Assembly: GCF_044704955.1 (NCBI RefSeq)
Contig: NC_091999.1
Span: forward strand, 47,182,001-47,246,000
Source: Pristiophorus japonicus
Lineage: Eukaryota
Direction of reading: 5' to 3'
DNA length: 64,000 bases
The translations under genes were made by a program, and so were the position numbers. The notes under the pieces were generated by a model, which did no database searches, was not told the origin of the DNA, and saw only the letters and a program-made list of their open reading frames with translations. How positions within the stretch are numbered: position 1 is the first letter of the stretch; each line of letters starts with the position of its first letter. This document shows, one piece after another, positions 17,986-48,400 of this stretch.

Positions 17986-18181
17986 AATTAGACATTACTA
18001 TTTTTAGTGAACAAATGTATCATTTCCCGTGTCCCAGCTCCTGTAAATACTGGCCGTAAAGGGATCGAATCCTCAGGAGGCTCCACACTGCTGGCTGTTC
18101 ATGAGTCAGTGATCTCGCATCACATTCATGGGCTTCTGCTGTGTGTGTTTAATAAAGTGTCAGGAGCATTTCACAAACAGT

Positions 18182-18610
18182 GAGGAACCAGTGAGTGTAG
18201 AACTGAACCCAGCCAGAGTCAGTACCTTCAGGGGAGGGGAACCAGTGAGTGTAGAACTGAACCCAGCCAGATCCAGCACCTTCAGGGGAGGGGAACCAGT
18301 GAGTGTAGAACTGAACCCAGCCAGAGTCAGCACCATCAGGGGAAGGGAACTAGTGAGAGTAGAACTGAACCCAGCCAGAGTCAGTACCTTCAGGGGAGGG
18401 GAGCCAGTGAGTGTAAAACTGAACCCAGCCAGAGTCAGCACCTTCAGGGGAAGGGAATTAGTGAGAGTAGAACTGAACCCAGCCAGAGTCAGTACCTTCA
18501 GGGGAGGGAAGCCAGTGAGTGTAGAACTGAACCCAGCCAGAGCCAGTACCTTCAGGGGAGGGGAACCAGTGAGTGTAGAACTGAACCCAGCAAGAGTCAG
18601 TACCTTCAGG
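18182..18610 (+). repeat. Shorter-unit (~51-bp) variant of the ZNF-associated repeat, about 8 copies (copy C)
   Basis: ggaaccagtgagtgtagaactgaacccagccagagtcagtaccttcaggggagg repeated. Confidence 0.9.
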
Positions 18611-19459
18611 TGGGAGGGGGCGAGCCCGAGTTGGGGGAGGGGGAGAGACGGGGTTGGGGGAGCCGGAGTTGGGGGAGAGGGGGAGGGAGAAAGAACGAGT
18701 TGGGGGAGAGGGGTGGAGAGGGAGAGCCTGAGTTGGGGAGGGGGGATGGGGAGAGCACAAGTTGGGGGAGAGGGGGAGGGGAAGAGCCCGAGTTGGGGTA
18801 GATGGTTAGAGCCCGATTGAGGGGGAGGGGGGAGCCCGAATTGCGGGGGAGGGGGAGGAGGAAAGCCCGTGTTGGGGGAGAGAGGGACGGGGAGCCCGAG
18901 TTTGGGGAGAGGGGGAGGGGGAGCCCGAGTTGAGGGAGAGGTGGAGGGGGAGAGCCCGAGTTGGGGAAGAGGGGGAGAGCCCGAGTTGGGGGAAAGAGGG
19001 AGGGGGAGAGCCCGTGTTGGGGGAGAGGGTGAGGGAGGGGGAGAGCCCGAGTTGGGTGAGTGGGGGAGGGGGGAGCCCAAGTTATTTGGGGAGAGGGGGA
19101 AGGGGAGGAGCCTGAGTTGTGGGGAGGAGAGGAGCCCGAGTTGGGGGGTGGGGAGGAACCCCAGTTGGGGGAGGTGAGAAGCGCCAGTTGTGGGGGAGAG
19201 GAGTAGCCTCAGTTGCGGGGGGGGGGGTGTGGTGAGTAGCTCGAGTCGGGGGGGAGGGGAGGATATAGGAGCCCGAGTCAGAAGGAGATGGGAGGGTGGC
19301 GGAGCCCGAGTCGGGAGGGGAGGGAGCCCGAGCCAGAGTGTGGTGGGTGGGAGGGGAGGGAGCCCGAGTTGTGGGGGGAGGGTAGGGAGCCCGAGTTGAG
19401 CTGGGAGAGAGCCCGAGTTGGGGAGAGGAGGGGTGGGAGCCCGAGTTGGGGGAGGGGTG
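18611..19459 (+). repeat. G-rich degenerate repeat (gagcccgagttggggg...)
   Basis: More than 25 copies of a GAGCCCGAGTT-like core separated by G runs. Confidence 0.9.
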
Positions 19460-21981
19460 TGTTGTGCATCTGTAAAGCATGCACTCCCATGTTCTGCCAA
19501 CAGGGAGCACATCCCCTGAAGTCCCAAGGGATCCCAGCATCCCTTGGGAGCACTGTACATAAGCCGGCCCCTAAGGCCTGTTCCTCATTCTGGAATGCCT
19601 TAATATAGACTGAGGTCACTGTTACTTTAATCTCCCTGTGTGCAGTCTGATCTCTGTTAGGAACACAATAACTGGCGACGAGTATGCAAATCCAATGGAA
19701 AGATGCAGCAAACTGTTGGCGTCCTGGAGAAGGTCTTGGAGGATGGGAACTAGGAAGCCTATGTCGAACGGCTAAACCATTACTTTGTAGCCAATGAGCT
19801 GGACGGAGAAGGAAGCGCTGCGAAAAGGAGAGCAGACCTCCTCACGGTTTGCGGGGCACCGACCTACAGCCTCATGAAGAATCTTCTGGCTTCAGTGAAA
19901 CTCACAGATAAGTCGTATGAGGAGCTGTGTACACTGGTTCGGGAGCATCTTAACCCGAGGGAGAGCGTGCTGATGGCGTGATATCGGTTCTACATGTGCC
20001 AGCGATCTGAAGGTCAGGAAGTGGCGAGCTACATCGCCGAGCTAAGGCGACTTGCAGGACAATGTGAATATGATGGCTACCTGGAGCAGCTGCTCGGAGA
20101 CTTTTTTGTACTGGGCATTGGCCACGAGACCATCTGACGAAAACTTTTGACTTTAGAGACACCGACCCTCAGTAAGGCCATTGAAATAGCACAGGCGTTT
20201 ATGTCCGTCAGTGATAACACCAAACAAATCTCTCAGCACACAAGTGCTATCAATGTTCACAAATTAATTGGAACTGTGTTTGTGAGCAGAAATGTACAGG
20301 GCAGAAACCACGTGTTTGCAATTGCCAGAAGGCCTCAGGTGACCCAGATGACTCAGAGTCCGCAACAAAGGATCAATGCAAGGTAATTCACACCTTGTTG
20401 GCGTTGTGGAGGCTTCCATTCAGCCTATTCATGCCGCTCCAAAGGGTATGTTTGCAACAGCTGTGGAACAATGGGGCTGCTCCAACGAGCTTGCAGACGA
20501 GCTGCAAGCTCTGCAAAACCTGCTGACCACCACGTGGCAGAGGAAGATCGGTCCATGGTGGATAAAAGCAATTTCGAGCCTCAGAGAGAGGAGGCAGATG
20601 CTGAAGTACACGGGCTGTACATATTTTCGACAAAATGTCCACCTATAATGCTAAATGTAAAATTGAATGGGTTACCCGTAGCCATGGAACTGGACACTGG
20701 CGCTTGCCAATCCATCATGGGTAAAAAGATGTTTGAGAGACTGTGGTGCAACAAGGCACTCATACCAGCCCTGAGCCCCATGCACACGAAACTGAGAACG
20801 TACACCAAAGAGCTCATCACTGTCCTGCGCAGCGCCATGGTCAAGGTCACCTATGAGGGCACGGTGCATGAACTGCCACTCTGGATTGTCCCGGGCGATG
20901 GCCCCACACTGCTTGGAAGGAGTTGGCTGGGCAAAATCCGCTGGAACTGGGATGACATCCGAGCGCTATCACATGTCGATGAGGCCTCATGTAGCCAGGT
21001 TCTTAAAAATATCCTTCCCTTTTTGAGCCAGGCATTAGACATTTTTACCGGGGCGAAGGTGCTCATCCACTTGGTCCCAGAGGTACGGCCCATTCACTAC
21101 AAGCTGCGAGCGGTACCTCACATGATGAGGGAGAGAGTGGAAATCGAGTTGGACAGGCTGCAACGCGAGGACATCATCTCCCCAGTGGAATTCAGTGAGT
21201 GGGCCAGCCCGATTGTTCCAAAGTGATGGCACGGTCAGGATTTGTGGCGATTATAAAGTAACTATTAATTATTTCTCGCTACAGGACCAATACCCACTAT
21301 CTAAGGCAGACTACCTATTTGCGACGCTGACAGGAGGCAAGACGTACACCAAGCTCGACCTGACTTCGGCCTACATGACGCAGGAGTTGGAGGAGTCTTC
21401 GAAGGGCCTCAACTGCATCAACACGCACAAGGGACTGTTCATCTCCAACAGATGCCCGTTTGGAATTCGGTTAGCTGTAGCGATCTTCCAGAGAAACATG
21501 GAGAGCCTATTCAAGTCAGTACCATGCACAGTGGTCTTTCAGGACGACATATTGGTCATGGGTCGGGACACTGTGGAGCACGTACAAACCTAGAGGGGGT
21601 CCTCCAGCGAATGGATCGCGTAGGGCTGCGGCTGAAGAGGTCGAAATGCGTTTTCATGGCAACAGAAGTGGAGTTTCTGGGGAGAAAGATCGCGGCGGAC
21701 GGCATTCGGCCCACAGACGTCAAGACTGAGGCGATCAGGAACGCGCCCAGGCCACAGAACATCATGGAGCTGAGGTCGTTCCTGGGACTTCTCAACTATT
21801 TTGGCAACTTCCTACCGGGTTAAGCACCCTCTTAGAGCTCCTACATGTGTTATTGCGTAAAGGTGAGAACTGGGTATGGGGGAAAAAAACAAGTAATTGT
21901 TTTTGAGAAAGCCAGAAACATTTTATGCTCCAACAAGCTGCTTGTATTCTATAACCTGTGTAAAAGACTTGTGCGAGCATG
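19460..21981 (+). mobile_element. Ty3/Gypsy LTR retrotransposon, 5' part, truncated at the start of RNase H
   Basis: 5' LTR 19460-19670 (TGTTGTG...CACAATA), PBS TGGCGACGAG at 19673, gag from 19703 with knuckle CWRCGGFH, protease MELDTGA, RT WASPIVP...RICGDYK...FQDD...LRSFLGLLNY. Several stops and frameshifts. Confidence 0.92.
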
Positions 21982-22511
21982 TGTTTTGGATCGATAATAA
22001 TAGATCCAGATTCGGGATCTGGATGAATGTTAAATAAGAGACAAGACAAATGAAGTAAAGATAAAACACCATTTACTGAGAGAAAGGAAACATCATAGAG
22101 TTTACGAAGAAAAGGGAAGTATGATAAGATGCAACAAAGGTCACGGCCTTCGGCCCGTCGGGAACTCCACAACGACGGCTGGTCTGGAGCCTTAGGGGTC
22201 CCGGCACCACTCGCGAATCCTGGTCTAAGGTGAAATTCAAAGAGCTACTGGTCAGTTCCGTTCCTTTACACTATTGAATAAACATGGGTGCATGTGGCTT
22301 ATGGACAACTCCTAATCTGTAAGTCCCCAGCTTTTCTTCCACAAAGCATGAGGCCTCGAGGCGCTGATCGTCCCATAAACAAGATGGTGTGCGCATCAAG
22401 GTCTCTCTCTCTCTCTGGATCAACAACATTCCACGAGGCATGAAGCAGAATACACACTGTAAGTGTCGGAATATCATAATTAACCCTATGTGATTAACCC
22501 TATACAATACA
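21982..22511 (-). repeat. ERV 3' LTR
   Basis: TG...CA termini on the minus strand, preceded by a degenerate purine tract AAGATTGGAT. Confidence 0.92.
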
Positions 22512-22608
22512 ATCCAATCTTGATATTTAGACATTCTAAGTAATATAATCGAGTTGAAAGCGTAGTGCATCAGTTACATATTGTGTATGCGCGAACAACG
22601 CCCACAAT

Positions 22609-23034
22609 CTACATCAAAGAATACATACATATCAGAAATAACGCGATGAGTAAAACAACGATAGGATGTAGTAACAGCTTCAAAGCGGCAGATGTCTTTG
22701 GGGACCATCCGTAAAAGATATCCCACCAATGGTGTACCGTAAGGTCAGTGACAGTTGTCGCAACTCTGACCAAGGCGCCTTCACTGTAACTCATAGCAAC
22801 TTGCAGAGTATGAAGAGTACGCCCTCGTTTGCTCAATTCGTCAGTGACCTTTTGATTATCTTTTAGAAATTGAGCTTAACGAGTTAGGTCTACAGTGGGA
22901 GGAAGGTTAGTAATTGTCTTGCGTACGATCAGTGTTAGCTATCCGCCACCCCATGCTGTGTTTGAGGATGGAAGTAGCACAGTCACAGATAAGGAGACAC
23001 AGAGGCTGGCCAGCACGAGTTGGTAAGTCGCCAT
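22609..23034 (-). pseudogene. env: Internally deleted env remnant (signal peptide plus membrane-proximal/TM region)
   Basis: One frame from MATYQLVLASLCVSLSVTVLL to HHWWDIFYGWSP...LLLHPIVVLLIALFLICMYSL, with two internal stops. Confidence 0.7.
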
Positions 23035-23076
23035 TTTGGGCAGAATTCCTGTGGGAGGAATCATAATTATATTAAT

Positions 23077-26070
23077 TCAGCCCCGTTTAGTCAATTTACC
23101 CTTGTCAACAGAGAGAGGAAAATCTTGACCCGTCAGGAGCACACAATAAGTGTTTCGTTCTCCTTTCACTAAGATTTCCCCTGCTTGTAAGCGTTTCTGG
23201 GGGTACTGCACCCACACTTTTCCTCCTTCACAAACTGTGTCCTGAGTCTGATTTTCTTTTTCAATAGTAGGGACACTAACTTTGCCTAACATGTGGCTTA
23301 TGGGAGTTCCCCCCAACAATGGTCGGTGATTCAGATTGCGCACTGCTTGTGGTAAGATCTTTAACCACCCTTGCAATGTGTTAGTGGGAGTTAATATTTT
23401 AATCTGTTGTTTAAGTAATCCATTCATGCGTTCCATTAAACCTGCAGCTTGCGGATAGTAAGGTTTGTGAAACATCCAATAGATCTCGTTGTCTACCGCC
23501 CACCGTTGCACTGTTTGACCTGTGAAGTGCGACCCATTATCGGACTGTACTTCTGCTGGCTCACTGTAGTATGTGATTAAATTCTCCAGTCCTTTAATTG
23601 TACTTGGTTGATTCGCTTTAGTCACTGGATAAGCGAACAAAAGTATAGAATAGGTATCAACAACAATGAGCAAATATTGGAACCGTTGTTGCAATGGTAA
23701 AGGTCCTACATCATCAACTTGCCATGTTTCTGCTGGTTGAGTCCCTCTCTTAATATGGCACCGTGTTGTCGTTGTTGGGGAAAATGCTTCACCTTTTGAC
23801 AAATTTCACAGGTGTTTATGATCTGATTAACACCGTCCGTCGTCAAATGTAACCCCCTATTTCGTGCCCACTATATCGTACCCTGAGTGCCCAAATATCT
23901 AGATTTGTGGTGGACCCACTTGCCTATGCCATATTCTTCCTCTTCCGCCTCTTTGACAGCCCGTACCCGGGCTATATTATCAACGGTGTTATTATATTCA
24001 GAGGTCTTTGAAGTATTTTTCATGTGAGTATCCACATGATATACAGTTATTTTCATCTTCTGGGCTTTGGACCATATTTGTTCCCATAGGTATTTTCCCC
24101 ACAAGTCTTTCCCAGTTATTTGCCAGTTATGTTCATGCCAGTTTCGCATTCAGCCCGCCATGCCATTGGCTACTGCCCATGCGTCAGTATATATGTTTAC
24201 TTGTTGCTGTTCCTCTTCTAACGCAAGGAATACAGCTGCTAGTTCTGCTTGCTGGCTGGAGCCTCCCACGCCCTCATCATGCACAATTGTCTGGGTTTTT
24301 GTATTGAAGGCAGCGGCTCGCCATCGCCGAAAGCCATTTCGCCAGACCGCTGAGCCACCTGTGAACCAGGCATGGCTACGTTCTTCGGGTGTTAACTGTT
24401 CAAAAGACACGCCCCAGGGGATCGGTGACTCTTTGGTTAAACTGACAGACGACTGCGTAAGTTCACTCTCAACTGTTTGTGGGTATTCAGCCACATGCTC
24501 ATGTAGCCGGGTGATTCCTTCTTTCCCTTTACTTGCTCTGTCTGCGATATACCATTTCGAGCGCACTATGGAGCTTTGCTGCACTCGCCCGACCTTATGT
24601 GTCTCATTTTCTGAGAGAACCCAGGATAATATGGGTAGGTCTGGTCTTAAACTGACTTTGGCGTCCCCTGTCTGTCCTTCTGATTCTGTAAGGGCCCAAT
24701 AACATGCTAATAATTGTTTCTCAAATGGAGTGTAACGAGCAGCAGCATCTGTCAATGTTCTAGACCATAACCCTAACGATATACGAGTGCCATGTTGAAC
24801 CTGCCACAAACTTCATATTGCAGTATCATTGGTAACGGATACCTGGAGCTCAAAAGGCTGTCCAGGCACTCGTGGGGCTAGGGGTAAAGCTTGAGCTACG
24901 GCTTCTTTGGCTGCATGTTGTTCCTTTCCCCACTCGAAGTGGGCCTTTTTTCGTGTTACGGCATACAACGGTTTTAAAAGCATCGTGAGGTGAGGGTTGT
25001 GTCTCCTCCAGTAACTCAATAGTCCCACGAACCGTTGTGTCTCAGTTTTATTCGTGGAGGTGGCCATTTCTTGAATGTTATTCTTCACAGGCTCGGGTAT
25101 GACGCGCTCACCCCGAGACCATTGGATCCCCAGAAACTGGACAATCTGGCTCGGGCCCTGCATCTTCTTCGGATTTATCTCCCAGCCCCTGTCTCTCATG
25201 TGTTGGACTAAAGTAGCTAGGGCTTCTGACACCACAGCCTCGGTGGGACCCCTTATTAGTACATCATCGATGTAGTGTGCCAGTGAGGCATTAGGAGCCA
25301 ACGTGCACATGTCCAGGTCCCGGGCCACCAATCCTTGGCATAGGGTAGCGCTATGTCGGTAACCTTGAGGTAGGCCTTTAAACGTGTATTGTCTCCCTTC
25401 CCAAGTGAATGCAAACTGGTCCTGGGATTCTTTCGCTATTGGAATGGAGAAAAAGGCATTGGCCAGGTCGGTAACCGCATACCACTCCGCACCTTCTTGA
25501 GACAGCCGCTCTGTTATAGTTACTACATCTGGGACAGCAGTTGCCAGGAGAGGGGCACATTTGTTCAGTTGTCGGTAATCCGCAGTCATCCTCCAACTTT
25601 TGTCGGATTTCTGCACACGCCAAACAGGGCTATTGTAGGGGGACACCACATGTCTAATGATTCCTGCCTCCAAGAGCCCTTGTATGGTTTCCCCTATTTC
25701 TTTGTGTCCCCCAGGTATGCGGTACTGTTTCATAGTCACTATACGCGATGGCCATGGTATTACCACTGGTTCCTACTTTGCTTCCCTGCAATCTCAGTGA
25801 TCGCCCATATCCCGAATGAGAATCGCCCAAACGAGTTGTTGTGTGTGATTCCCTTTAAAAGGTCCATCCCAATAATATGTTCCTTTACTGCCGATATTAA
25901 GACCGTTACCCAGCGCGGAGGCCCATTTCCCAACGCCATTTTGATAGTTGTTCGGACAGCGGGCGTTTCTGCCCCTCCGAACCCATTAATCATCACACGG
26001 GTCCCTGTGTGTTTCCTAGGGTTTCCATGGATAATAGTAACTTCTGCCCCTGTGTCTAGTAAAGCAACAT
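23077..26070 (-). pseudogene. pol: ERV pro-pol (PR-RT-RNaseH-IN), disrupted
   Basis: ORFs 24813-25766 (RT), 24150-24809 and 23871-24149 (tether/RNase H; WFTGGS instead of WFTDGS), 23077-23802 (integrase). Confidence 0.92.
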
Positions 26071-26125
26071 CTCTTTGTATGTTCGCCCCTGCCCCGCCAC
26101 TGTATCGTAATCGGAATGTGTGGCC

Positions 26126-27745
26126 TCAGATCCCCGGGAACTTGGGTTGATGTGGTTCTAACGGGGAGTACTCCTGGATCCTGGCCACACCCCATTCGAG
26201 GGGATTACTAGCCTTCCACAGCTCTTCTACGCTGGGGTATAGGCTAGTGGGAGGTGGTTTCTCCGCATCCGCAGACTTGTCGCTATCCGACTTAGTCTCC
26301 CTTACCTCCCTCCTTTTTCCCTTCCCTGTTCCCGGGACGCAGCGTTGCTTCCACATAGAATACATTGTGCTGTTGGGATTCCATCAATTTTTTCCTTGGG
26401 GACCCCTGCTTTCAGTAAAGCCGTGAACATGTCCCTCCGCAAAATTATTTTTTTTTCTTTCCTGACCCTATATCTTTCCCAGAGGTCGAACCTTGTCGCT
26501 GGTCCTGATCCCCCTCTACATTAGCCGTTCTCGACTCTCCCACACTATCTTCTACATCCTCTAACTGTCCTAACAACAGGAAAGCGTCCCCTACCCGCTG
26601 CCCTTGGGCTGGTCCCAATAATGCGAGTAGTGCACCCCTCATCATAGGAGGGCCACTCTTCATCAGCCTGCTCTGCATTCCTGCCGTAAAGAGCTCCTGG
26701 TCTGGCCCCCCATATTGTTGGTGATATATTCCTCCCTGTGTTGCCATGTTGCACAATTGTATTGCACCCTCTCCCACAGTACTCCAAGGTTTTACCTCCA
26801 CTTCCAAATCAACGGAGAGGGATATTTTTGCTGGACCCCTATAATAACCATGTCCCATAGCGACTTGTTCCCTGGACATTCCGTAGCACTGCTGTGATAT
26901 AGTGGTCCGTAATCATAGTCCTCAGTTTTGTTAACTCTTCAGGGTTAAATATTACGCCTGATGCTCCCTGATCCCAAATCCGGGTTAGCCATTCTGACAA
27001 TGATTCCTCGGGTTTTTTGCGAAATCGAGACCCTATTTCTTGTAACTCACTAGTGGTCAAGTCACGCACCCCTCTAGTGGTTACCAGCTGTTCCCCATCT
27101 TGCTGTTTCGCCTTATTTGTCATAAGGGGTCTAGCTTTCGTGCTCGGAGCGTATGGGGGAGGATTTTTAGTTTCCTCCCGTTCCCCCCCTCTCCATCTGT
27201 CCACTCATATTCTGAGTCAGAGGAGTACCAGATGTCTCCTTCCCAATGAGCCGGATCCCAAGTGGGTCCAGCTACCAATGCACGTACCTTTGACCGATCT
27301 ATCTGCAATTTCCATCGTCTGGCTTTTTAATAATTTTGTACTTTCACCAGATGGCATATTAAAGTTTCTGATTGTTCATTGAGCTTGTCCACCCGTTATT
27401 GTGCAGTGCGGATCGCTTCAGTGAGAGTCGAGTTTTGACTTTCAAAAACTTTAACAGCTGTTTTTAACTCTAGGTTTTCTGCCTCACTTTCCTTAAGTTG
27501 TTTACACATCGTCCTTAATGCTGTCAACAAAATCCATTCCATTTGTGAGGGACTACTTTTCTCCTGTGGGCTACGGTTCTATCTTTGCTCTGTTCCAATA
27601 ACTGCATATCCCAATGTTGCGGGGGTGCAAACTGGGCTAGCACATTGGCAAGAGAGCCAAAACCCTCATCCCTCATGCTCCCCCCTGGTATTCTATACTT
27701 CTCTCCCGCAGGAGGAGACTGCTCCTTGTCTTTTCTCTTAAACAT
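26126..27745 (-). pseudogene. gag: ERV gag (fragmented)
   Basis: Successive ORF pieces (MFKRKDKEQ..., NPPPYAP late-domain-like motif, FRKKPEESLSEWLTRIWDQGA) between PBS and protease. Confidence 0.8.
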
Positions 27746-27753
27746 TTTACCAG

Positions 27754-27771
27754 ATCATGTTCGTGACGTCA
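27754..27771 (-). promoter_or_regulatory. Primer-binding site complementary to tRNA-Ser(CGA)
   Basis: TGACGTCACGAACATGAT versus TGGCGTCACGAACAGGAT expected from the vertebrate tRNA-Ser(CGA) 3' end as I recall it (16/18). Lies 3 nt inside the 5' LTR. Confidence 0.8.
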
Positions 27772-27774
27772 ACA

Positions 27775-28307
27775 TTTTTTGGATCGATAATAATAGACCC
27801 AGGTTCGGGATCTGGATGAATGTTTAATAAGAGACAAGACAAATGAAGTAAAGATAAAACACCGTTTACTGAGGGAAAAGAAACATAATACAGTTTAAGA
27901 AGAAAAGAGAAGTATGATAAGATGCAACAAAGCTCATAGCCTTCGGACCATCGGCAACTCCGCAACGACGGCTGGTCTGCAGCCTTAGGGGTCCCGGCAC
28001 CACTCGCGAATCACGGTGCAAGGTGAAGTTCAAAGAGCTACTGGACAGTTCCATTCCTTTGTACTATTGAACAAACATGGGTGCATGTGGTTTATGGCCA
28101 ACTCCAAATCAGTAAGGCCCCAGCTGTTCTTCCACAAAACATGAGACCTCGAGGCGCCGACCGTCCCATAAACAAGTTGGTGTGTGCATCAAGGTCTCTC
28201 TCTCTCTCTCTCTGCATCAGCAACATTCCACGAGGCATGAAGCAGAAACAAACTGTAAATGTCGAAATATCATAATTAACCCTATGTGATTAACCCTACA
28301 CAATACA
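27775..28307 (-). repeat. ERV 5' LTR
   Basis: Direct repeat of 21982-22511 (about 9% mismatches by manual count). Begins TGTATTG on the minus strand. Confidence 0.92.
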
Positions 28308-28309
28308 GG

Positions 28310-29740
28310 GGCCACAAGCCGCACCCCTTGCACACGCTGATTGGTTGGAAGACTAACCGCCCACCCAGACCTCCAGCTCCACAACTGCTCTCCCTATTGA
28401 TCGGGAGCTGCCGTCAATCAGCCAGGCAGTGTGAGCTGAGCATGCGCGGTGGGTGAGACAGGGGGTCAGAGATGGGTGGAGGGAGGGAGCGATTTAATAA
28501 AGGACGTGCATATTTGTACTGCAAAAATGGCCGCCATGCTCCAACCTTTTTCCATGATTGGTTCCTTTGGAAGATAAGCCACAGCCTGAGGTGTCACTCG
28601 AATGTGTAACTGAAACCGCCCATCCCAACGTCTCATTTACTTTGCAAATTGTAACTTGATCCACTTTGACTTCCTGAAACAACAGAGGCAGAGCTCCCAG
28701 AAGACAGCGACTGCCAGCCAAAGTGTCTTGCCCCAGTCCCAGTACATCCTTCCCCAGTCGAAGTGCCTTACTCCAGTACCAGTATATGCCTCCCCAAGCC
28801 AAAGTGCCTTATCCAGTCCCAGTGCATTCCTCCCCCAGCCAAAGTGCCTTACCCCAGTCCCAGTATATGCCTCCCCAGGCGAAGAGCTTTACCCGAATAT
28901 ATGCCTCACCCAACCAAAGTGCCTTACCCCAGTCCCAGTATATGCCTCCCACAGGCGAAGAGCCTTACCCCAATATATGCCTCCCCCAATCAAAGTGCCT
29001 TACCCTAGTCGCAGTGCATGCTTCCCCCAGCCAACGTGCCTTACTCCAGTCGCAGTGGAAGTTTCCTCCAAACGAAGTGCCTTACCCCAGTCCCGGTGCA
29101 TGCCTCCCCCAGCCGAAGTGCCTTACCCCAGTCCCAGTGCATGCATCTCCCAGCCGAAATGCCTTACCTCAGTCTCAGTGCATGCCCCCACCCCAGCTAA
29201 AGTGCCTTACCCCAGTCCCAGTGTACGCCTCCCCCAGCCAAAGTGCCTTACCCCTGTCCCAGTGTACGCCTCCCCAAGCCGAAGTGCATTACCCCAGTCC
29301 CAGTGCATGCCTCCCCCATCCGAAGTGCCTTACCCAAGTTTTATTTCTCTGCACCACATGCACAGAATGATTCGGGCCCAGATGGGGCGGGGCTTGTCTC
29401 CGGTCAGTCACAAAGTGCAGAACCAATAGTTCCCTGCGTTAATAAACCCCGGGCGGGACACGCAGCCCAAGCGCGGGCCCAGGCCCGAGAGACAACACTC
29501 GGCACCATCCGCTTCACATACACCCGGGCTCGTCCCCAATAACCGAATCACAGCCCGGTTCCAGGCCCAGTCAGTGAGCGTCCGGGGCAGCGGGCTCAGC
29601 GGCCGTCATCTTGGTCAGGTTTGGGGAGCGGGCTCAGTGGCCGCCATCTTGGTCAGAGCGGATCTCGCGGTGCATGCGCGGCCCTTTGGGCAGCGATAAT
29701 GGATGGGCGGGGCTTCAGTCAGTTTGATTGGACACATGTT
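28310..29740. promoter_or_regulatory. GC/CpG-rich promoter-like region split by a minisatellite
   Basis: YY1-type AAAATGGCCGCC (~28524) and GCCGCCATCTT (~29640), NRF1-like GCATGCGCG (28440, 29672), GC boxes GGGCGG, ATTGG boxes. Confidence 0.55.
28720..29336. repeat. ~40-bp minisatellite
   Basis: Unit gaagtgccttaccccagtcccagtgcatgcctcccccagcc. Confidence 0.9.
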
Positions 29741-29809
29741 TGTGACCAGGTCAGTGGGCCCTGACAGGGAGCCTTGTTGTGCTGACTGTTGTCTGGTGAC
29801 CCTGTGCCA

Positions 29810-30326
29810 GCCCGGCTCATCCTATTGGGCCAGCCCAAGCTCGGCCTATGGGTCCAGCCCGGCTCATCCTATTGGGCCAGCCCGGCTCACCCTATTGGGC
29901 CAGCCTGGGCTCACACTATTGGACAGACCCGTCTCACCCTATTGGGCCAGCGCGGGTTCACACTATTGGGCCAGCATGACCTCAACCTATGGGGCCAGCA
30001 TGGGCTCATCCTATTGGGCCAGCACAGACTCACCCTATTGGGCCAGCCTGGGCTCACCCGATTGAGCAAGCCTGGGCTCGCCATATTGAGCCAGCCCGGG
30101 CTCGCCCTATTGGACCAACCCGGCTCACCCTATTGGGCCAGCATGGGTTCACCCTATTGGGCCAGCATGTGCTCACCCTATTGGACCAGCCCGGGCTCAC
30201 CCTATTCGGCCAGCTTGGGCTCACCATATTGGATTAGCATGGGCTCTCCCTATTGGGCCAGCCCGGCTCATCCTATTGGGCCAGCACAGGCTCACCCTTT
30301 TGCGCCAGCACAGGCTCACCCTATTG
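29810..30326. repeat. ~23-24-bp minisatellite
   Basis: Unit cccggctcaccctattgggccag, about 21 copies. Confidence 0.9.
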
Positions 30327-31802: not shown

Positions 31803-31930
31803 CTTCACCAGAGTGACGGCAGCGCTGTAGGAAATGCTCAGGAAGAACAGGATGATGAATGTGGAAGCTGTTGTCCAGATGTTACCGCTCTCGTACTCAT
31901 AGTCTTCATTCCAGATGTGGTCTGAGGAAT
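31803..31930 (-). CDS. IGHM: IgM TM1 exon (DSSDHIWNEDYEYESGNIWTTASTFIILFFLSISYSAAVTLVK)
   Basis: ccccgtag|ATTCC...GTGAAG|GTGGGA. Acidic spacer and the conserved antigen-receptor TM motif WTTASTF..LF.LS..YS..VT. In phase with the Cmu4 internal donor. Confidence 0.95.
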
Positions 31931-34713: not shown

Positions 34714-35105
34714 TCATTGACAAGAATTGATGGTGTCCATCAGAACAAGGGAAATGTTGACGAAACTGGGTTTACCGCTGGATTTATTGACGGTTCTGTT
34801 GGTGATCTTCAAGGGGATCGCTTCATGTCCCACCACACAGGAGTAAGAAGCGCCGCTGGCCCACTCCTCGGCTGCAATGGATAGCAGGCTGTACATGAAG
34901 AAGGATCTGCTGCCGTTCTCCGCCATCACCTCGGTGTTCTTGTAGTTGCCCGAATCCACCGGCTTGTCATTGACGGTCCATTTGACGAAGATCTCTCGGG
35001 GGGAGAAACCTCTCACTAAGCAGGTGAGGCTGACCAACCTCTGAGCGGAGACTTCTTCTGCCGAGGGCAGGAGGACAGACACGGCTGGTTCCCGTGGAGC
35101 TTTCG
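34714..35105 (-). CDS. IGHM: IgM Cmu4 exon with secretory tailpiece ([20 protein letters not shown])
   Basis: ttttctatag|CGAAAGC. Tailpiece has the NIS glycosylation sequon and penultimate Cys. Internal donor AGCG|GTAAA at 34776/34775 for the membrane form. Confidence 0.96.
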
Positions 35106-36026: not shown

Positions 36027-36335
36027 CCTTTTCCTTGTGAATGGAATCTCTGATAGGAGTCGGCATATCCTGATGGCTCACCACGCAGTAGAACTTATCC
36101 CCACTCAGCCAGTCTTGTGTCGAGATGTTTAAGTTGCTGATCACACTGTTGGGATCCTCTCCAGGTTGGACAGCAATCTCTGATTTCAAAGCCTCCTTTT
36201 CTCGGGTCCAGGACACGGTGAGTCCATAAGGAGCGTCAGACACGATGCAGGTTAAGGTCACCGTCGCCTCCAGTAAGACCTGTTCCAGTGACGGTGGGCG
36301 AAGAGTGATTTTTGAATCGCTGCATGGGACATCCA
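36027..36335 (-). CDS. IGHM: IgM Cmu3 exon
   Basis: tttcgcag|TGGATGTC...AAAAGG|GTGAGC, 309 nt. [17 protein letters not shown]...FYCVVSHQD. Confidence 0.95.
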
Positions 36336-38291: not shown

Positions 38292-38609
38292 CCTGAGATC
38301 TGCTGAAGTTACGGCTTTGCATGACCCCTTGATGAGTGACCTGGCAGGTGTAGACCGAGCTGGTGAACCATTCCTCGGCGGGGACCGTCAGCCGACTGGC
38401 CGTCGAGAAGTTCCCGTTCACCTTAAAGACGGGAGAGGTGATGAAGCCCGAATCCAGGAGTTGTCCACTTTTCAGCCAATTCACGGTCAGTGACTTTGGC
38501 CGGAAATCGATGATTGAACACACAGCGCTTGCATATCTGCTGCTGGTGATTTGTTCAGTGGAACTCAGCGTGAGGAGAACAGTTGGAGGAACGATGTCCC
38601 GTTCAGGAT
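38292..38609 (-). CDS. IGHM: IgM Cmu2 exon
   Basis: tttttgaag|ATCCTGAA...TCTCAGG|GTAAGA, 318 nt. C1-set domain (VCSIIDF...NWLK...YTCQVTHQG). Confidence 0.94.
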
Positions 38610-39406: not shown

Positions 39407-39706
39407 CTGGCATTGTGATGGCCCAGACCGACACACCACGTCGAACCTCGCAATAGATTGTGCTGCTCCCCACATCTGACTCGGTGATGGTTAACTGGCT
39501 GCTCTGGGTGTAGGTTCCCTTCTTGTTGAGCACTGGCGGGTAGGTCTTCAATCCAGTGGTGATCGGCACTTTATCTTTCTTCCAGGAAAGGCTGGTGATA
39601 TCGGGGGAGTAGTCCATCGCCAAACAACCGTATGTGATGGAGTCATCGGTGCTTGGTTGTTCACAGGAGGAGAGCAGGGCGTAGAGGGTAGGGGGAGACG
39701 ATGTTA
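39407..39706 (-). CDS. IGHM: IgM Cmu1 exon
   Basis: ttttttcccag|TAACATCG...ATGCCAG|GTTAGT, 300 nt. Encodes [13 protein letters not shown]...[10 protein letters not shown]...IYCEVRRG, a shark Cmu1 pattern. Confidence 0.95.
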
Positions 39707-45606: not shown

Positions 45607-46858
45607 TTATAGCATATTTTAATAACACTGGGAGATATCGCATTATAATCGGTTGGTTAATATTAATTTAATTCCACTACAACCTAAACACTTATTAATT
45701 ATGTATATGGTAATTAGTTACATTTCACACAATAAAATATCAGCATCGTAAACATAGATTAATAGTTGAATATATAATTATCACTTCAATAATTGTTATG
45801 TTAAAATACATTTCAATGATTTATGATTTCTAACACCTTCCTGTTCTCTGCCTACAATCTGTTTCCAAACAGTTTCAAACATATATCATTATTGCATTCG
45901 AGCGTAAACCTGCTGCTGCTCGCTGACACCGATATTAAACATTGTAGAAACGCGAAACTGCTTCACAAATTCTAGGTATTCTGAGTAACACAGGCACAAA
46001 CTCTCCTCAGCAGATCAACACTAAATCACATCACTGAGGGGCGGAATCCCTCGACAGAATCTTTCATGGAGCAGACCCTTCATTCTATAAACTCTTTCAG
46101 CAGAATCAAATGTATCCTTGCAAAAAATCTCATTACACAATCACCAAACCCGCCTAACAATGAAATAACTAATGATTGAATTCAACAGAAATGTAAAATA
46201 CTGACAGCAGAGTTGTGATTTGACAGATCATGCTGAATAAATTAATGTTCATATTATAGCATATTTAATAATAATTGGTGATATTACTACATTATAATAA
46301 TGTTAGTAATATTAATTTAAATCTTCCGGCTGGAAATATTAATTTTTCAGTTCTTAATTACAGTAACACTTCACGTATTTAATCTGAGCGTTCGGGATCA
46401 TTCGCTCAGTTGATGAGAATGTAATTTTAATTAAAAAACATTAAATTCCTTAAGATTATTTACTGATCGCTAAGCTTTCTGTTTTGTGCCTACAATGTTC
46501 CTTTAAATAGATTTAAACACAATGTTTGCATTCGATCAGAAGAACTGCAACAATCAGAGGTCATCGAGATTAAACATTGCAGAAACGTCAAACAGTGTAA
46601 CAACCATAAAGTATTTAAAGTAACCCAGGCACACAGTCGTCAGCGAATAAACACCAAATCACATCAACAACATTTTCTGTGGAGAAACTGTTGAATTCTA
46701 TAATCATTTTGCAGCAGAATCACATTGAGCATTGCAAAAAATCTCAAAACAAAATCCACCGAACCCAAGTTTCAGTGAACAAAATAATTATTAAAATAAA
46801 CAAAAATATAAAATAAAGACACAAATACAAGAGTTACTGAATGAGTGAATGTTCCTTA
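45607..46858. repeat. Ancient ~610-645-bp tandem duplication at the start of the J-C intron
   Basis: Paired anchors: ttatagcatattt 45607/46254, tgcctacaat ~45849/46487, attaaacattg.agaaacg ~45934/46569, cagcagaatca 46099/46712, ttgcaaaaaatctca 46118/46732. Confidence 0.8.
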
Positions 46859-46859
46859 C

Positions 46860-46907
46860 CTGCAGTCACCGTCACCATGGTCCCTTGTCCCCAGTAGTCC
46901 ATAGCGT
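46860..46907 (-). CDS. IGHJ: JH segment (AMDYWGQGTMVTVTA)
   Basis: WGQG motif and donor GCAG|GTAAG at 46859. Confidence 0.96.
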
Positions 46908-46935
46908 CACAGTGAGACACGTTGTGTCAAATACT
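46908..46935 (+). other. JH 5' RSS with 12-bp spacer
   Basis: CACAGTG (46908-46914), spacer agacacgttgtg (12 nt), nonamer TCAAATACT (46927-46935). No nonamer-like sequence at the 23-nt position (ggcggactg). Confidence 0.88.
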
Positions 46936-47250
46936 CCGGCGGACTGTTAACTGTAAAATACAGAGATTAATTTGCACGCAGCTTTGAAAGCCTGATTCTG
47001 ACTCCCCTAAGAGTGAATCAGTGAGATATTTCAGTTTGTACCGTTCATTATATTTATAAAAAATGATTGGAATACTTCTGAAGCAGCTGTGCAGATTCAG
47101 CATGTCAATCAAGAGTAATAAAGCAGAAAAATGTGATACATTTAAATATATATATATCTTACTTCCACTCATTATTTTTACTTAAACCTCAGTTCCTTCG
47201 ACGCTCCTGGCGTGGTAGCGATCGCATGTTTGTGCAAATTCCATGTCTGG

Positions 47251-47288
47251 GGTTTTTGTATGGTAAGCTCGCTCTGTATACCACCGTG
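47251..47288 (-). other. D 3' RSS, 22-bp spacer (23-class)
   Basis: Heptamer CACGGTG (47288-47282), 22-nt spacer, consensus nonamer ACAAAAACC (47259-47251). Confidence 0.93.
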
Positions 47289-47305
47289 GCCCACTGCTGT
47301 AGTCC
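47289..47305 (-). CDS. Single DH segment GGACTACAGCAGTGGGC (17 nt; D1-type)
   Basis: Flanked by a 12-RSS and a 22-RSS. Open in all three frames (GLQQW / DYSSG / TTAVG). Confidence 0.92.
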
Positions 47306-47333
47306 CACAGTGACAGGAACCCGCACAAATACT
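47306..47333 (+). other. D 5' RSS, 12-bp spacer
   Basis: CACAGTG (47306-47312), spacer acaggaacccgc (12 nt), nonamer ACAAATACT (47325-47333). Confidence 0.93.
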
Positions 47334-47740
47334 GCCCTCACTCTCTGCTCAGTACTGACTCTCAACGTACACTTCAAATAGACATTCACTTCAAATACAC
47401 ATTCGCTTCTGATCAAGTTTAGAATTTAGCCAACAGTTTACACAACACAATAGAAAGTGAACACACTTCCAACCAGCTCCCTGCATGTACCAGGCACAGT
47501 GAATCGAGCATCATCTCCAGCTCTGCAATTGCTGACACTGTTCACATTAAACAGGAGCACAACCAAAACTACCCCTCAGTACATGGGTTAGTGTGTTAGA
47601 TTTTCACCATTGAATTCTCAGTGTCTTAGTTTTGTAAGAAGCGGTTTATGGTCTTGTTCTGAACACTGTTGTTAACATTGCATTTGTCACACTTACTGAC
47701 CGTCAGGTTATGATGGAAATTGTTGAATTCCCTCTCGATC

Positions 47741-47779
47741 TGTTCTTGTACGGGTCCAGCCCTGGTTCCTCTCGCTGTG
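47741..47779 (-). other. VH 3' recombination signal sequence, 23-bp spacer
   Basis: Heptamer CACAGCG (47779-47773), 23-nt spacer, nonamer ACAAGAACA (47749-47741). Confidence 0.93.
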
Positions 47780-48084
47780 GTACCTTGCACAGTAATAGAT
47801 GGCGGTGTCTTCGCTCTTCAGGTTCTTCATGTCCAGCGCGAAGATGTTGTTTGAAGTGTCTTTGGACGCAGTAAATCGGCTCGCAATCCCTGCGGCATAA
47901 TACTTGTTCGATGGACTGTAATACTGAACCAGCCACTCCAGCCCCTGTCCGGGAATCTGGCGGATCCAGTACATGTAGCTGCCACCAAGATCGAAGCCGC
48001 TGGTTTTACAGGTCAGTCTCAGGGAGACCCCGGGAATCCTGGTCTCTGCCTCGGGCTGAGTCAACACCACATCCGACTGGACAC
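47780..48084 (-). CDS. IGHV: Unrearranged VH segment ([10 protein letters not shown]...[27 protein letters not shown]...[10 protein letters not shown])
   Basis: Acceptor ttttcacag|GTGTCC. Open frame with both canonical Cys, the FR2 Trp and YYCAR. Followed by a 23-RSS. Confidence 0.97.
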
Positions 48085-48210
48085 CTGTGAAAATAATCAA
48101 AAACCCCTACGATCAATCCTGGTGAAATGATTCCTGACTCTGTAACATTCCAGAGAGAAACTAACACTGAGACAGTAACAGTGAGAGATTGGACAATAAA
48201 AACTACTCAC

Positions 48211-48256
48211 GGGAAAAGAAAACCAGCAACACACTGAGAGAAATCGCCAACCTCAT
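48211..48256 (-). CDS. IGHV: IgM heavy-chain leader exon (MRLAISLSVLLVFFSR)
   Basis: ATG at 48256-48254, hydrophobic signal peptide, donor C|GTGAGT at 48210. Splices in frame to the V exon, giving ...[13 protein letters not shown]. Confidence 0.95.
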
Positions 48257-48344
48257 CCTCCTGGCAATGTGTGGTGAATGGTTCCGGCAAGAGCTCACTG
48301 AGCAAACCCACTTCCAGACTGTTGTATTGCGGTCGCAATGACCG

Positions 48345-48400
48345 GCAGTTAAATAGCCGGGAGATGGGGGCGAGGTCACAGGCGCCGCCCATTGATTCCC
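48345..48400 (-). promoter_or_regulatory. Putative VH promoter: TATTTAA box, CRE-like TGTGACCTCG, CAAT; no octamer
   Basis: Minus strand reads ...gaatcaatgggcggcgcctgtgacctcgcccccatctcccggctatttaa... about 95-140 nt upstream of the leader ATG. Shark VH promoters are known to lack the mammalian octamer. Confidence 0.55.

What the first reader, a model, noticed from the sequence alone, without database searches (positions are those of the whole stretch)
46860..47779. Single-D shark IgM cluster with a 12-RSS JH: TCR-beta-like V23 / 12D22 / 12J wiring
Seen: VH has a 23-RSS, the only D has 12/22 RSSs, and JH has a 12-RSS (CACAGTG-12-TCAAATACT). I find no second D in the ~380 bp between D and J. 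Established: typical shark IgM clusters are V23-12D1(22)-12D2(12)-23J, and IgH J segments normally carry 23-RSS, which makes D use obligatory; V23/12D23/12J is the TCR-beta arrangement. Inference: this intact cluster needs only two joins, gives shorter CDR3s, and under the 12/23 rule can join V directly to J, producing D-less heavy chains. Variant and germline-joined clusters have been reported in chondrichthyans, so novelty for this configuration must be checked.
Basis: partly seen in the sequence, partly recalled or inferred. Interest (0 to 1): 0.85.

Follow-up and report, generated by a model that had tools for sequence, protein, structure and literature searches.

The report
Shark IgM cluster missing D2
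An intact shark IgM antibody gene cluster has only one D segment, and its J segment carries the kind of recombination signal that normally sits in front of a second D, most likely because that D was lost in the germline; this is a new variant of a known shark habit, not a new system.

Summary
On the minus strand lies a complete IgM minilocus: leader, VH, one D, JH, Cmu1-4 with a mu tailpiece, and TM1. The signals are VH CACAGCG-23-ACAAGAACA, D with 12 (5') and 22 (3'), and JH AGTATTTGA-12-CACTGTG. A lax scan finds no second D, and JH has no nonamer at 23 spacing.

DNA contigs from a public run of the same species cover the whole stretch and cross the J/12-RSS border, so an assembly collapse is unlikely.

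The J's 12-RSS shares its nonamer core and heptamer with the D's 5' RSS. In other contigs, from the same species and from a relative, a homologous RSS sits in front of D-like coding. Another relative has a J whose flank lacks a 12-spaced nonamer. The best reading is a canonical V-D1-D2-J cluster that lost D2 and the J's 23-RSS in the germline, probably through RAG.

Two joins, shorter CDR3 and legal V-to-J joining follow from the 12/23 rule. None of these, nor expression of this cluster, was shown.

Unverified first-stage notes of this scan report the same wiring at three or more other clusters in this genome. The papers I could search list germline VD-J, VD-DJ and VDJ forms but not this one. 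I rate it a new variant of a known kind, of moderate interest.

The parts
48211..48256 (-). Leader exon 1 (ATG at 48256-48254; gtgagt donor at 48210). A TATA-like CTATTTAA lies about 90 nt upstream.
   Evidence: Read directly from the sequence. No canonical octamer within 160 nt of the ATG.
47780..48084 (-). VH exon (end of leader plus FR1 to FR3, ending YYCARY). The open frame has the conserved Cys, Trp and Cys.
   Evidence: Pfam V-set, E=1.5e-14. Best named relative is the Heterodontus francisci VH, HV01_HETFR, at 76% identity. ORF.
47741..47779 (-). VH 23-RSS: CACAGCG-23-ACAAGAACA
   Evidence: heptamer 6/7, nonamer 7/9. The nonamer at 12 spacing scores only 4/9.
47306..47333 (-). D 5' 12-RSS: AGTATTTGT-12-CACTGTG
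47289..47305 (-). The single D segment, GGACTACAGCAGTGGGC (17 nt, D1-type by its RSS pair).
   Evidence: At least 7 nt of it occur in 2 of the 12 cDNA junction inserts shown from a relative, one with 12 nt.
47251..47288 (-). D 3' 22-RSS: CACGGTG-22-ACAAAAACC
   Evidence: nonamer 9/9. No alternative nonamer at 10-14 nt.
46936..47250 (-). D-J interval (315 nt) with no RSS-like site. Inferred to be the former D1-D2 interval.
   Evidence: Lax scan. No internal homology with the V-D interval. Spanned by DNA contigs of run X1: record 2 covers 47030-47312 and record 1 covers 46871-47130.
46908..46935 (-). JH 12-RSS: AGTATTTGA-12-CACTGTG. Inferred to be the former D2 5' RSS.
   Evidence: Homologous RSSs precede D-like coding in an organism-A contig and in organism-E contigs.
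46860..46907 (-). JH coding (48 nt, AMDYWGQGTMVTVTA) with the splice donor at 46859.
   Evidence: In run X5, J-type sequence is spliced at 46860 to a CH1-like sequence in 108 contigs.
39407..39706 (-). Cmu1 exon
   Evidence: ORF. Pfam C1-set. Splice sites read.
38292..38609 (-). Cmu2 exon
36027..36335 (-). Cmu3 exon
34714..35105 (-). Cmu4 exon with the secretory tailpiece (...[20 protein letters not shown], then stop).
   Evidence: Residues 3-121 align to the end of solved Ig mu chains, E about 1e-46. Pfam C1-set, E=3.9e-22.
31803..31930 (-). TM1 exon (…NIWTTASTFIILFFLSISYSAAVTLVK).

Best explanation
This is a complete and apparently functional shark IgM minilocus wired V(23) / (12)D(22) / (12)J. 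It most likely descends from a canonical V-D1-D2-J cluster. A germline event removed the D2 coding, D2's 3' RSS, the D2-J interval and the J's own 23-RSS, leaving D2's 5' 12-RSS directly against JH. The likeliest agent is RAG acting in germ cells. One route is an ordinary D2-J coding joint in which D2 was trimmed away completely. The other is a hybrid joint that ligated the 12-RSS signal end of D2 to the J coding end. In lymphocytes the cluster should be assembled by two joins (V to D with 23/12, D to J with 22/12) in either order. A direct V-to-J join is also legal under the 12/23 rule. Shown here: the segments, the spacers, the absence of a second D, the intact exons, and the presence of the J/12-RSS border in independent DNA contigs. 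Inferred: the origin by loss of D2, the role of RAG, and every functional consequence.
For: Anatomy: searches give the RSS types, show no hidden D, and show no 23-spaced nonamer at J. Intactness: the V and C exons are open, there are V-set and four C1-set domains, Cmu4 with its tailpiece matches solved mu chains, and TM1 and the splice sites are present.

D2 origin of the J signal:
(a) The J RSS and the D 5' RSS share the unusual nonamer core AGTATTTG and the heptamer CACTGTG at the same spacing. This pattern occurs 2 times against 0.04 expected.
(b) One DNA contig of the same species aligns to the J's 12-RSS and then continues into GTACAGTGGGTGG followed by CACAGCA, which reads as D-like coding with a 3' heptamer.
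(c) Two organism-E contigs carry a homologous RSS followed by ATATACTGG. That D-like motif lies in the J-proximal half of a cDNA junction insert from organism B.
(d) Organism C has a J plus heptamer whose flank has no nonamer at 12 (1/9). Its spacer resembles this cluster's V 23-RSS spacer, which points to a 23-RSS J in a relative.

Geometry: V-D is 474 nt, D-J is 381 nt and J-Cmu1 is about 7.1 kb. Nurse shark segments lie about 400 bp apart, with J 6.3-6.8 kb from Cmu1. V-D-DJ is a documented somatic intermediate there (PMC2435157).

Germline joining by RAG in shark germ cells is established (PMC2193156).

Not an assembly error: X1 DNA contigs have depth in 30 of 30 bins, and no DNA joint appears among those listed. 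At the J/RSS border, about 72 of 198 depth units cross without any indel. A paralogous contig with the same layout crosses with 2 extra nt.
Against: The J coding is 48 nt with 17 nt before the Trp codon, and its YAMDYW-like 5' end reads as a plain J. No D2-derived nucleotides are recognisable, which is unexpected for an ordinary coding joint. Outside the RSS there is no sequence homology between the flank upstream of D and the flank upstream of J. The key contigs are known only as loose ends of 30 letters or fewer, and one of them is a single contig. The organism-C loose end behind 46899 matches this J RSS only weakly (11 of 30). The canonical spacer scheme (V23, D1 12/22, D2 12/12, J23) rests on my recollection of Kokubu et al. 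1988, which is not held in the library. Expression of this particular cluster was not shown.
Confidence: 0.6

Rival explanations
1. The same structure arose without RAG, by a deletion between two direct repeats. The CACTGTG heptamer 5' of D2 and the CACTGTG heptamer 5' of J are identical and in the same orientation. Replication slippage, microhomology-mediated repair or unequal exchange between them would delete D2 and the 23-RSS and leave an untouched J behind a 12-RSS.
For: The J coding looks complete and carries no D2 or N nucleotides. Both heptamers in this cluster are CACTGTG. Such a deletion would give exactly the observed junction.
Against: Seven nucleotides of homology is little for a deletion of about 450 bp. 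A paralogous contig differs by 2 nt exactly at the heptamer/J border. That looks more like junctional processing, or a second independent event, than a clean repeat-mediated deletion. Germline RAG activity on these same clusters is documented (PMC2193156). First-stage notes, which I did not check, report many other joined forms in this genome.
Confidence: 0.15
2. The V23 / 12-D-23 / 12-J wiring is a primary, TCR-beta/delta-like design of IgM clusters in this shark lineage and not a derivative of the four-segment cluster. The D2 plus 23-RSS-J form would then be the derived one, or simply a parallel form.
For: The spacer pattern equals that of TCR-beta/delta. IgH clusters are linked to the TCR alpha/delta locus in elasmobranchs (PMC12227049). 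First-stage notes list at least four clusters with this wiring and none explicitly with a 23-RSS JH on this chromosome.
Against: By established knowledge, JH carries a 23-RSS in bony vertebrates, as described for mouse in PMC2435157. From my recollection it does so in horn shark too. Organism C has a J whose flank is not a 12-RSS. The homologue of this J's RSS precedes D-like coding in other contigs. One note reports a D with 12/12 signals elsewhere in this genome, which implies a 23-RSS J there (unverified). D2-type motifs are used J-proximally in a relative's cDNA.
Confidence: 0.15
3. The structure is not germline. It is either an assembly collapse that dropped D2, or a somatic V-D-DJ intermediate from lymphocyte DNA that was captured in the assembly.
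For: V-D-DJ is a real somatic intermediate in sharks (PMC2435157). The tissue that was sequenced is unknown to me. At several positions all X1 contigs differ from the window, so X1 does not simply confirm this haplotype.
Against: X1 DNA contigs cover all 30 bins, cross the J/12-RSS border and span from D into the D-J interval with no gap. A paralogue with the same layout exists in the same run. There is no repeat that could cause a collapse between D and J. A single lymphocyte clone would not dominate a genome assembly. The same wiring is noted at several other loci (unverified).
Confidence: 0.04

Closest known systems
Canonical elasmobranch IgM minilocus VH-D1-D2-JH-Cmu (horn shark, Kokubu et al. 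1988, recalled; nurse shark, PMC2435157)
   Same: One VH with leader and 23-RSS. A D1-type D with a 12/22 pair. Segments a few hundred bp apart. One JH about 7 kb upstream of Cmu1. Four Cmu exons, a mu tailpiece and TM exons.
   Different: There is no D2. JH carries a 12-RSS instead of a 23-RSS. Two joins are needed instead of three, and V-to-J joining becomes legal under the 12/23 rule.
Germline-joined and partially joined shark Ig clusters (VD-J, VD-DJ, VDJ; PMC2193156, PMC5192425, PMC4279169)
   Same: An inherited cluster that looks like a rearrangement intermediate. It lacks one interval and one RSS pair, which is attributed to RAG activity in germ cells.
   Different: No D2 nucleotides are recognisable at the junction, so it may be a hybrid joint or a clean deletion and not a coding joint.
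Somatic V-D-DJ (1R) intermediate of nurse shark IgM rearrangement (PMC2435157)
   Same: The same topology: V and D1 unrearranged, with the 12-RSS of D2 leading into J.
   Different: Here it is in assembled genomic DNA and in DNA contigs of a public run, and paralogous copies exist. It carries no D2 or N nucleotides.
TCR-beta / TCR-delta RSS arrangement (V23 / 12-D-23 / 12-J)
   Same: An identical spacer logic, which permits direct V-J joins. D-less TCR-beta rearrangements are reported as common in humans (PMC8488670, abstract seen).
   Different: V, J and C are unambiguously immunoglobulin mu. The resemblance is one of wiring only.

Membership tests
Cartilaginous-fish IgM heavy-chain cluster | A single VH with a split leader and a 3' 23-RSS | tested here: met
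Cartilaginous-fish IgM heavy-chain cluster | One JH with the WGxG motif and a splice donor, a few kb upstream of Cmu1 | tested here: met
   J to Cmu1 is about 7.1 kb.
Cartilaginous-fish IgM heavy-chain cluster | Four C1-set exons, a mu-type secretory tailpiece and TM exons | tested here: met
Cartilaginous-fish IgM heavy-chain cluster (canonical form) | Two D segments (D1 12/22, D2 12/12) and a 23-RSS on JH | tested here: not met
   One D only, and the J RSS has a 12-nt spacer with no nonamer at 21-25 nt. The canonical spacers are recalled from Kokubu 1988, which is not held.
Germline-joined / partially joined shark Ig cluster | One intersegment interval and one facing RSS pair are lost relative to the open cluster | tested here: met
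   The D2 3' RSS and the J 23-RSS are absent, and the V-to-J span is 1.4 kb. For comparison, nurse shark PCR products are about 1.64 kb for germline and about 1.2-1.27 kb for 1R forms (PMC2435157; a different species, so indicative only).
Germline-joined / partially joined shark Ig cluster | The junction shows fused coding ends (residual D nucleotides, trimming, N/P additions) | tested here: inconclusive
   No D2-like nucleotides lie 5' of J. A paralogue differs by 2 nt at the border. This is compatible with a hybrid joint, with full trimming of D2, or with a repeat-mediated deletion.
Germline-joined / partially joined shark Ig cluster | Present in germline (non-lymphoid) DNA | tested here: inconclusive
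   It is present in the assembly and in DNA contigs of run X1. The tissue and individual are unknown.
TCR-beta/delta-type recombination wiring | V 23-RSS, D 12 (5') and 23 (3'), J 12-RSS | tested here: met
   (22 counts as 23 minus 1).
TCR-beta/delta locus | TCR-type V, a J with FGxG, and a TCR C region | tested here: not met
   The J has WGQG, the C exons are mu and the V is VH.

The most novel reading that the evidence does not exclude
In this shark lineage a large share of the working IgM clusters are single-D, TCR-beta-wired miniloci. They descend from one or a few germline RAG events, possibly hybrid joints that transplanted D2's 12-RSS onto an intact JH, and were then spread by cluster duplication. 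The species would build much of its heavy-chain repertoire with two joins and could make D-less heavy chains. That would be a natural experiment on how RSS rewiring reshapes a primary antibody repertoire.
Probability: 0.3. Interest if true: 0.7.

Novelty: new variant of a known kind. Interest (0 to 1): 0.5.

Why it matters
Shark Ig clusters are the classic evidence that RAG can act in germ cells and remodel antigen-receptor genes over evolutionary time. It makes JH a 12-RSS segment and makes V-to-J joining legal, as in TCR-beta. If a genome-wide census confirms that such clusters are common and expressed in this species, three things become testable. The first is whether 'beyond 12/23' restrictions operate at an Ig locus. 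The second is how much CDR3 length and diversity depend on the second D. The third is whether germline hybrid joints leave fossils. If it is one of many dead or rarely used variants, it is only a further example of the known plasticity of these loci.

Tried and rejected
2. Primary papers for the canonical spacer scheme and for nurse shark and skate clusters are not held: Kokubu 1988 (PMC454840), Hsu 2016 (PMC4874517), Lee 2008 (PMC2590587), Harding 1990 (PMC330358), Flajnik & Kasahara 2010 (PMC3805090) and Rumfelt 2001 (PMC29333). The scheme is therefore cited from memory.
3. Eight full-text searches found no description of a germline V-D-DJ form or a 12-RSS JH in IgM clusters. The library lacks most subscription journals, so this is weak evidence of novelty.
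4. Local alignment of the flank upstream of D against the flank upstream of J, and of the V-D interval against the D-J interval, gave no homology beyond the nonamer. Scores were at or below the shuffle means.
5. I searched for a hidden D2 or a 23-spaced nonamer at J and found none. A lone CACTGTG at 47501-47495 and weak RSS-like matches at 47623 and 47570 in the V-D interval have no partner nonamer or coding context. I take them as chance.
6. The search of earlier findings by sequence came back blank.
7. For RNA evidence on this cluster, the runs labelled with the window's species (X18-X20) hold next to none of its words. The cDNA-like run X5 is labelled as another organism. Most of its V contigs diverge at CDR1 and CDR2, and its dominant CH1 differs from this cluster's, so I claim no expression for this cluster.
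8. I did not pursue species identification. The nearest named VH is horn shark at 76%, and organism names in the run list are coded.

Full report
WHAT IS THERE. The finding lies on the minus strand of the window. Reading in sense, the elements are as follows.
- A leader exon at 48256-48211, a short intron, and a VH exon at 48084-47780 that ends ...YYCARY.
- A V RSS, CACAGCG-23-ACAAGAACA, at 47779-47741.
- After 407 nt (47740-47334), a D 5' RSS, AGTATTTGT-12-CACTGTG, at 47333-47306.
- A 17-nt D, GGACTACAGCAGTGGGC, at 47305-47289.
- A D 3' RSS, CACGGTG-22-ACAAAAACC, at 47288-47251.
- After 315 nt, a J RSS, AGTATTTGA-12-CACTGTG, at 46935-46908.
- A 48-nt JH at 46907-46860 (AMDYWGQGTMVTVTA) with a gtaagg donor.

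A consensus scan of the whole window picks out exactly these four signals at the coding borders.

About 7.1 kb downstream lie four C1-set exons: Cmu1 39706-39407, Cmu2 38609-38292, Cmu3 36335-36027 and Cmu4 35105-34714. A TM1 exon lies at 31930-31803. Cmu4, including its tailpiece [20 protein letters not shown], aligns end to end with solved immunoglobulin mu chains at E about 1e-46. The V is a VH. Its best named relative is the horn shark VH at 76%, followed by bamboo shark and cat shark V segments at 68-74%. This is a complete IgM minilocus, uninterrupted in every exon, from a shark that is none of those species.

IS IT AN ASSEMBLY OR SOMATIC ARTEFACT? I laid contigs of four public runs on 46700-48400. 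Run X1 is DNA labelled with the window's species.
- It has depth in all 30 bins, and no DNA joint appears among those listed.
- One contig spans the D and 259 nt of the D-J interval without a gap (47030-47312, 9 differences).
- Another spans J coding, the 12-RSS and 195 nt upstream (46871-47130, 23 differences). This is a paralogue with the same layout and 2 extra nt exactly at the heptamer/J border.
- About 72 of 198 depth units cross that border with no indel.
- At several positions all X1 contigs differ from the window. X1 is therefore not merely the window's own reads, but neither does it confirm this haplotype base for base.

There is no repeat between D and J that could cause a collapse. 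I put an artefact at about 4%.

WHERE DID THE 12-RSS ON J COME FROM? By my recollection of Kokubu et al. 1988 (not held), the canonical horn shark cluster is V23 / 12-D1-22 / 12-D2-12 / 23-J. Malecek et al. 2008 confirm for nurse shark the V-D1-D2-J order, the spacing of about 400 bp and the 6.3-6.8 kb from J to Cmu1. They also show that V-D-DJ arises somatically as a one-rearrangement intermediate (PMC2435157). Removing D2, its 3' 12-RSS, the D2-J interval and the J 23-RSS from that scheme gives exactly the wiring seen here. Four observations support this.
1. The J RSS and the D 5' RSS share the same off-consensus nonamer core and the same heptamer. This is what duplicated D-type signals would look like.
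2. One organism-A DNA contig aligns to the J's 12-RSS and then continues not into J but into GTACAGTGGGTGG followed by CACAGCA. That reads as D-like coding with its own 3' heptamer.
3. Two organism-E contigs carry a homologous RSS (heptamer plus AGAC..., then aligned sequence) in front of ATATACTGG. In the cDNA-like run X5, TATATACTGGGG and CTGGGTGG motifs sit in the J-proximal half of junction inserts. GTACAGC and ACAGCAGTGGGC, which resemble this cluster's D, sit V-proximally. This is the expected D1-then-D2 order.
4. Organism C has a J and heptamer followed by a flank with no nonamer at 12 (1/9). Its spacer contains the same GGGCTGG core as this cluster's V 23-RSS spacer, which suggests a 23-RSS J in a relative.

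These contigs are seen only as loose ends of 30 letters or fewer. The inference is reasonable but not proven.

WHICH EVENT? An ordinary D2-J coding joint should leave D2 or N nucleotides. Here J is 48 nt with 17 nt before the Trp codon, and its 5' end reads (Y)AMDYW, as a plain J would. No D2 remnant is recognisable. Three routes fit.
- A coding joint with D2 trimmed away completely.
- A RAG hybrid joint, in which the 12-RSS signal end of D2's 5' side is ligated to the J coding end. These two RSSs are a legal 12/23 pair in the same orientation.
- A RAG-independent deletion between the two direct CACTGTG heptamers.

The 2-nt difference at the border in a paralogue hints at junctional processing or separate events, but it is a single case. 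I favour RAG because germline RAG joining is documented for shark Ig genes (PMC2193156). First-stage notes from this genome, unverified, also list VD...J, V...DJ and D-less V...J clusters.

HOW IT SHOULD WORK. By the 12/23 rule, V(23) can join D(12) and D(22) can join J(12), so two joins suffice. V(23) to J(12) is also allowed and would delete the D, as in TCR-beta, where D-less rearrangements are reported (PMC8488670, abstract). None of this was observed for this cluster. X5 is clearly spliced Ig cDNA: 108 contigs join J at 46860 to a CH1-like sequence. It shows 90 V-J joints. The 12 printed inserts are 15-31 nt long, and some of that length comes from V and J end differences between paralogues. 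However, X5 is labelled as another organism. Its dominant V contigs diverge at CDR1 and CDR2, and its dominant CH1 start (ATPSPPTL) differs from this cluster's (VTSSPPTLY). The two inserts attached to an ATGGACTAC-type J like this one leave about 8 and 17 nt between paralogue-specific V and J ends. That is compatible with zero or one D, but two sequences prove nothing.

KNOWN OR NEW? Germline-joined and partially joined clusters are textbook for cartilaginous fish. The reviews I could read name VD-J, VD-DJ and VDJ (PMC5192425, PMC4279169, PMC3308330, PMC6795676). None of my eight full-text searches found a germline V-D-DJ form or a 12-RSS JH in IgM clusters. The library lacks the key subscription papers, so absence is weak evidence. 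Within this scan, first-stage notes report the same wiring at three or more other places on this chromosome, and a follow-up agent described a germline V-DJ cluster. I could not check those. I therefore classify this as a new variant of a known kind, of moderate interest. Interest would rise if a census shows these clusters dominate the expressed repertoire.

Organism names are coded.

Noticed in passing
window:48256-48420 (minus strand, upstream of the leader): No canonical Ig octamer (ATGCAAAT) lies within 160 nt of the leader ATG. The only one-mismatch match sits about 500 nt upstream. A TATA-like CTATTTAA is present. In the cDNA-like run X5, depth falls off between about 48296 and 48352, consistent with a start site just downstream of that TATA in related clusters.
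   Followed up: partly
window:47495-47501 and 47543-47623: The V-D interval contains a lone perfect heptamer CACTGTG without a nonamer, and a weak back-to-back pair of RSS-like matches (CACTGAG-22-ACACTAACC, then AGTTTTGGT-12-TAATGTG). These are probably chance, but relics of an older signal pair are conceivable.
   Followed up: partly
window:46907/46908: A paralogous cluster in organism-A DNA (run X1, 263-nt contig) has the same D-J-interval / 12-RSS / J layout. It has 2 extra nt exactly between the heptamer and J, giving a J that starts TTACGCTATGG (YAMDYW).
   Followed up: partly
window:47292-47294: An organism-C DNA contig carries the same D with a 3-nt deletion (GGAC-AGCAGTGGGC). A cDNA junction insert from organism B contains that shorter form (ACAGGACAGCAGTGGGC...).
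   Followed up: partly
window:52600-53810: Long ORFs on the minus strand translate as a tandem repeat (…LDPVSVYITLDPV…). This is a satellite-like tandem array upstream of the cluster.
   Followed up: no
window:33000-33270: A TG/CA-rich simple-sequence tract between Cmu4 and TM1, with high GC skew (0.42) and strongly negative AT skew (-0.35) in that bin. It produces spurious RSS-like hits.
   Followed up: no
window:50046-50426: A run of 381 N, about 1.8 kb upstream of the leader.
   Followed up: no
window:10000-12000 and 18000-20000, 28000-30000: GC-rich blocks (0.56-0.59) downstream of the cluster. Another first-stage note calls 19460-28320 a provirus-like insertion. I did not examine it.
   Followed up: no
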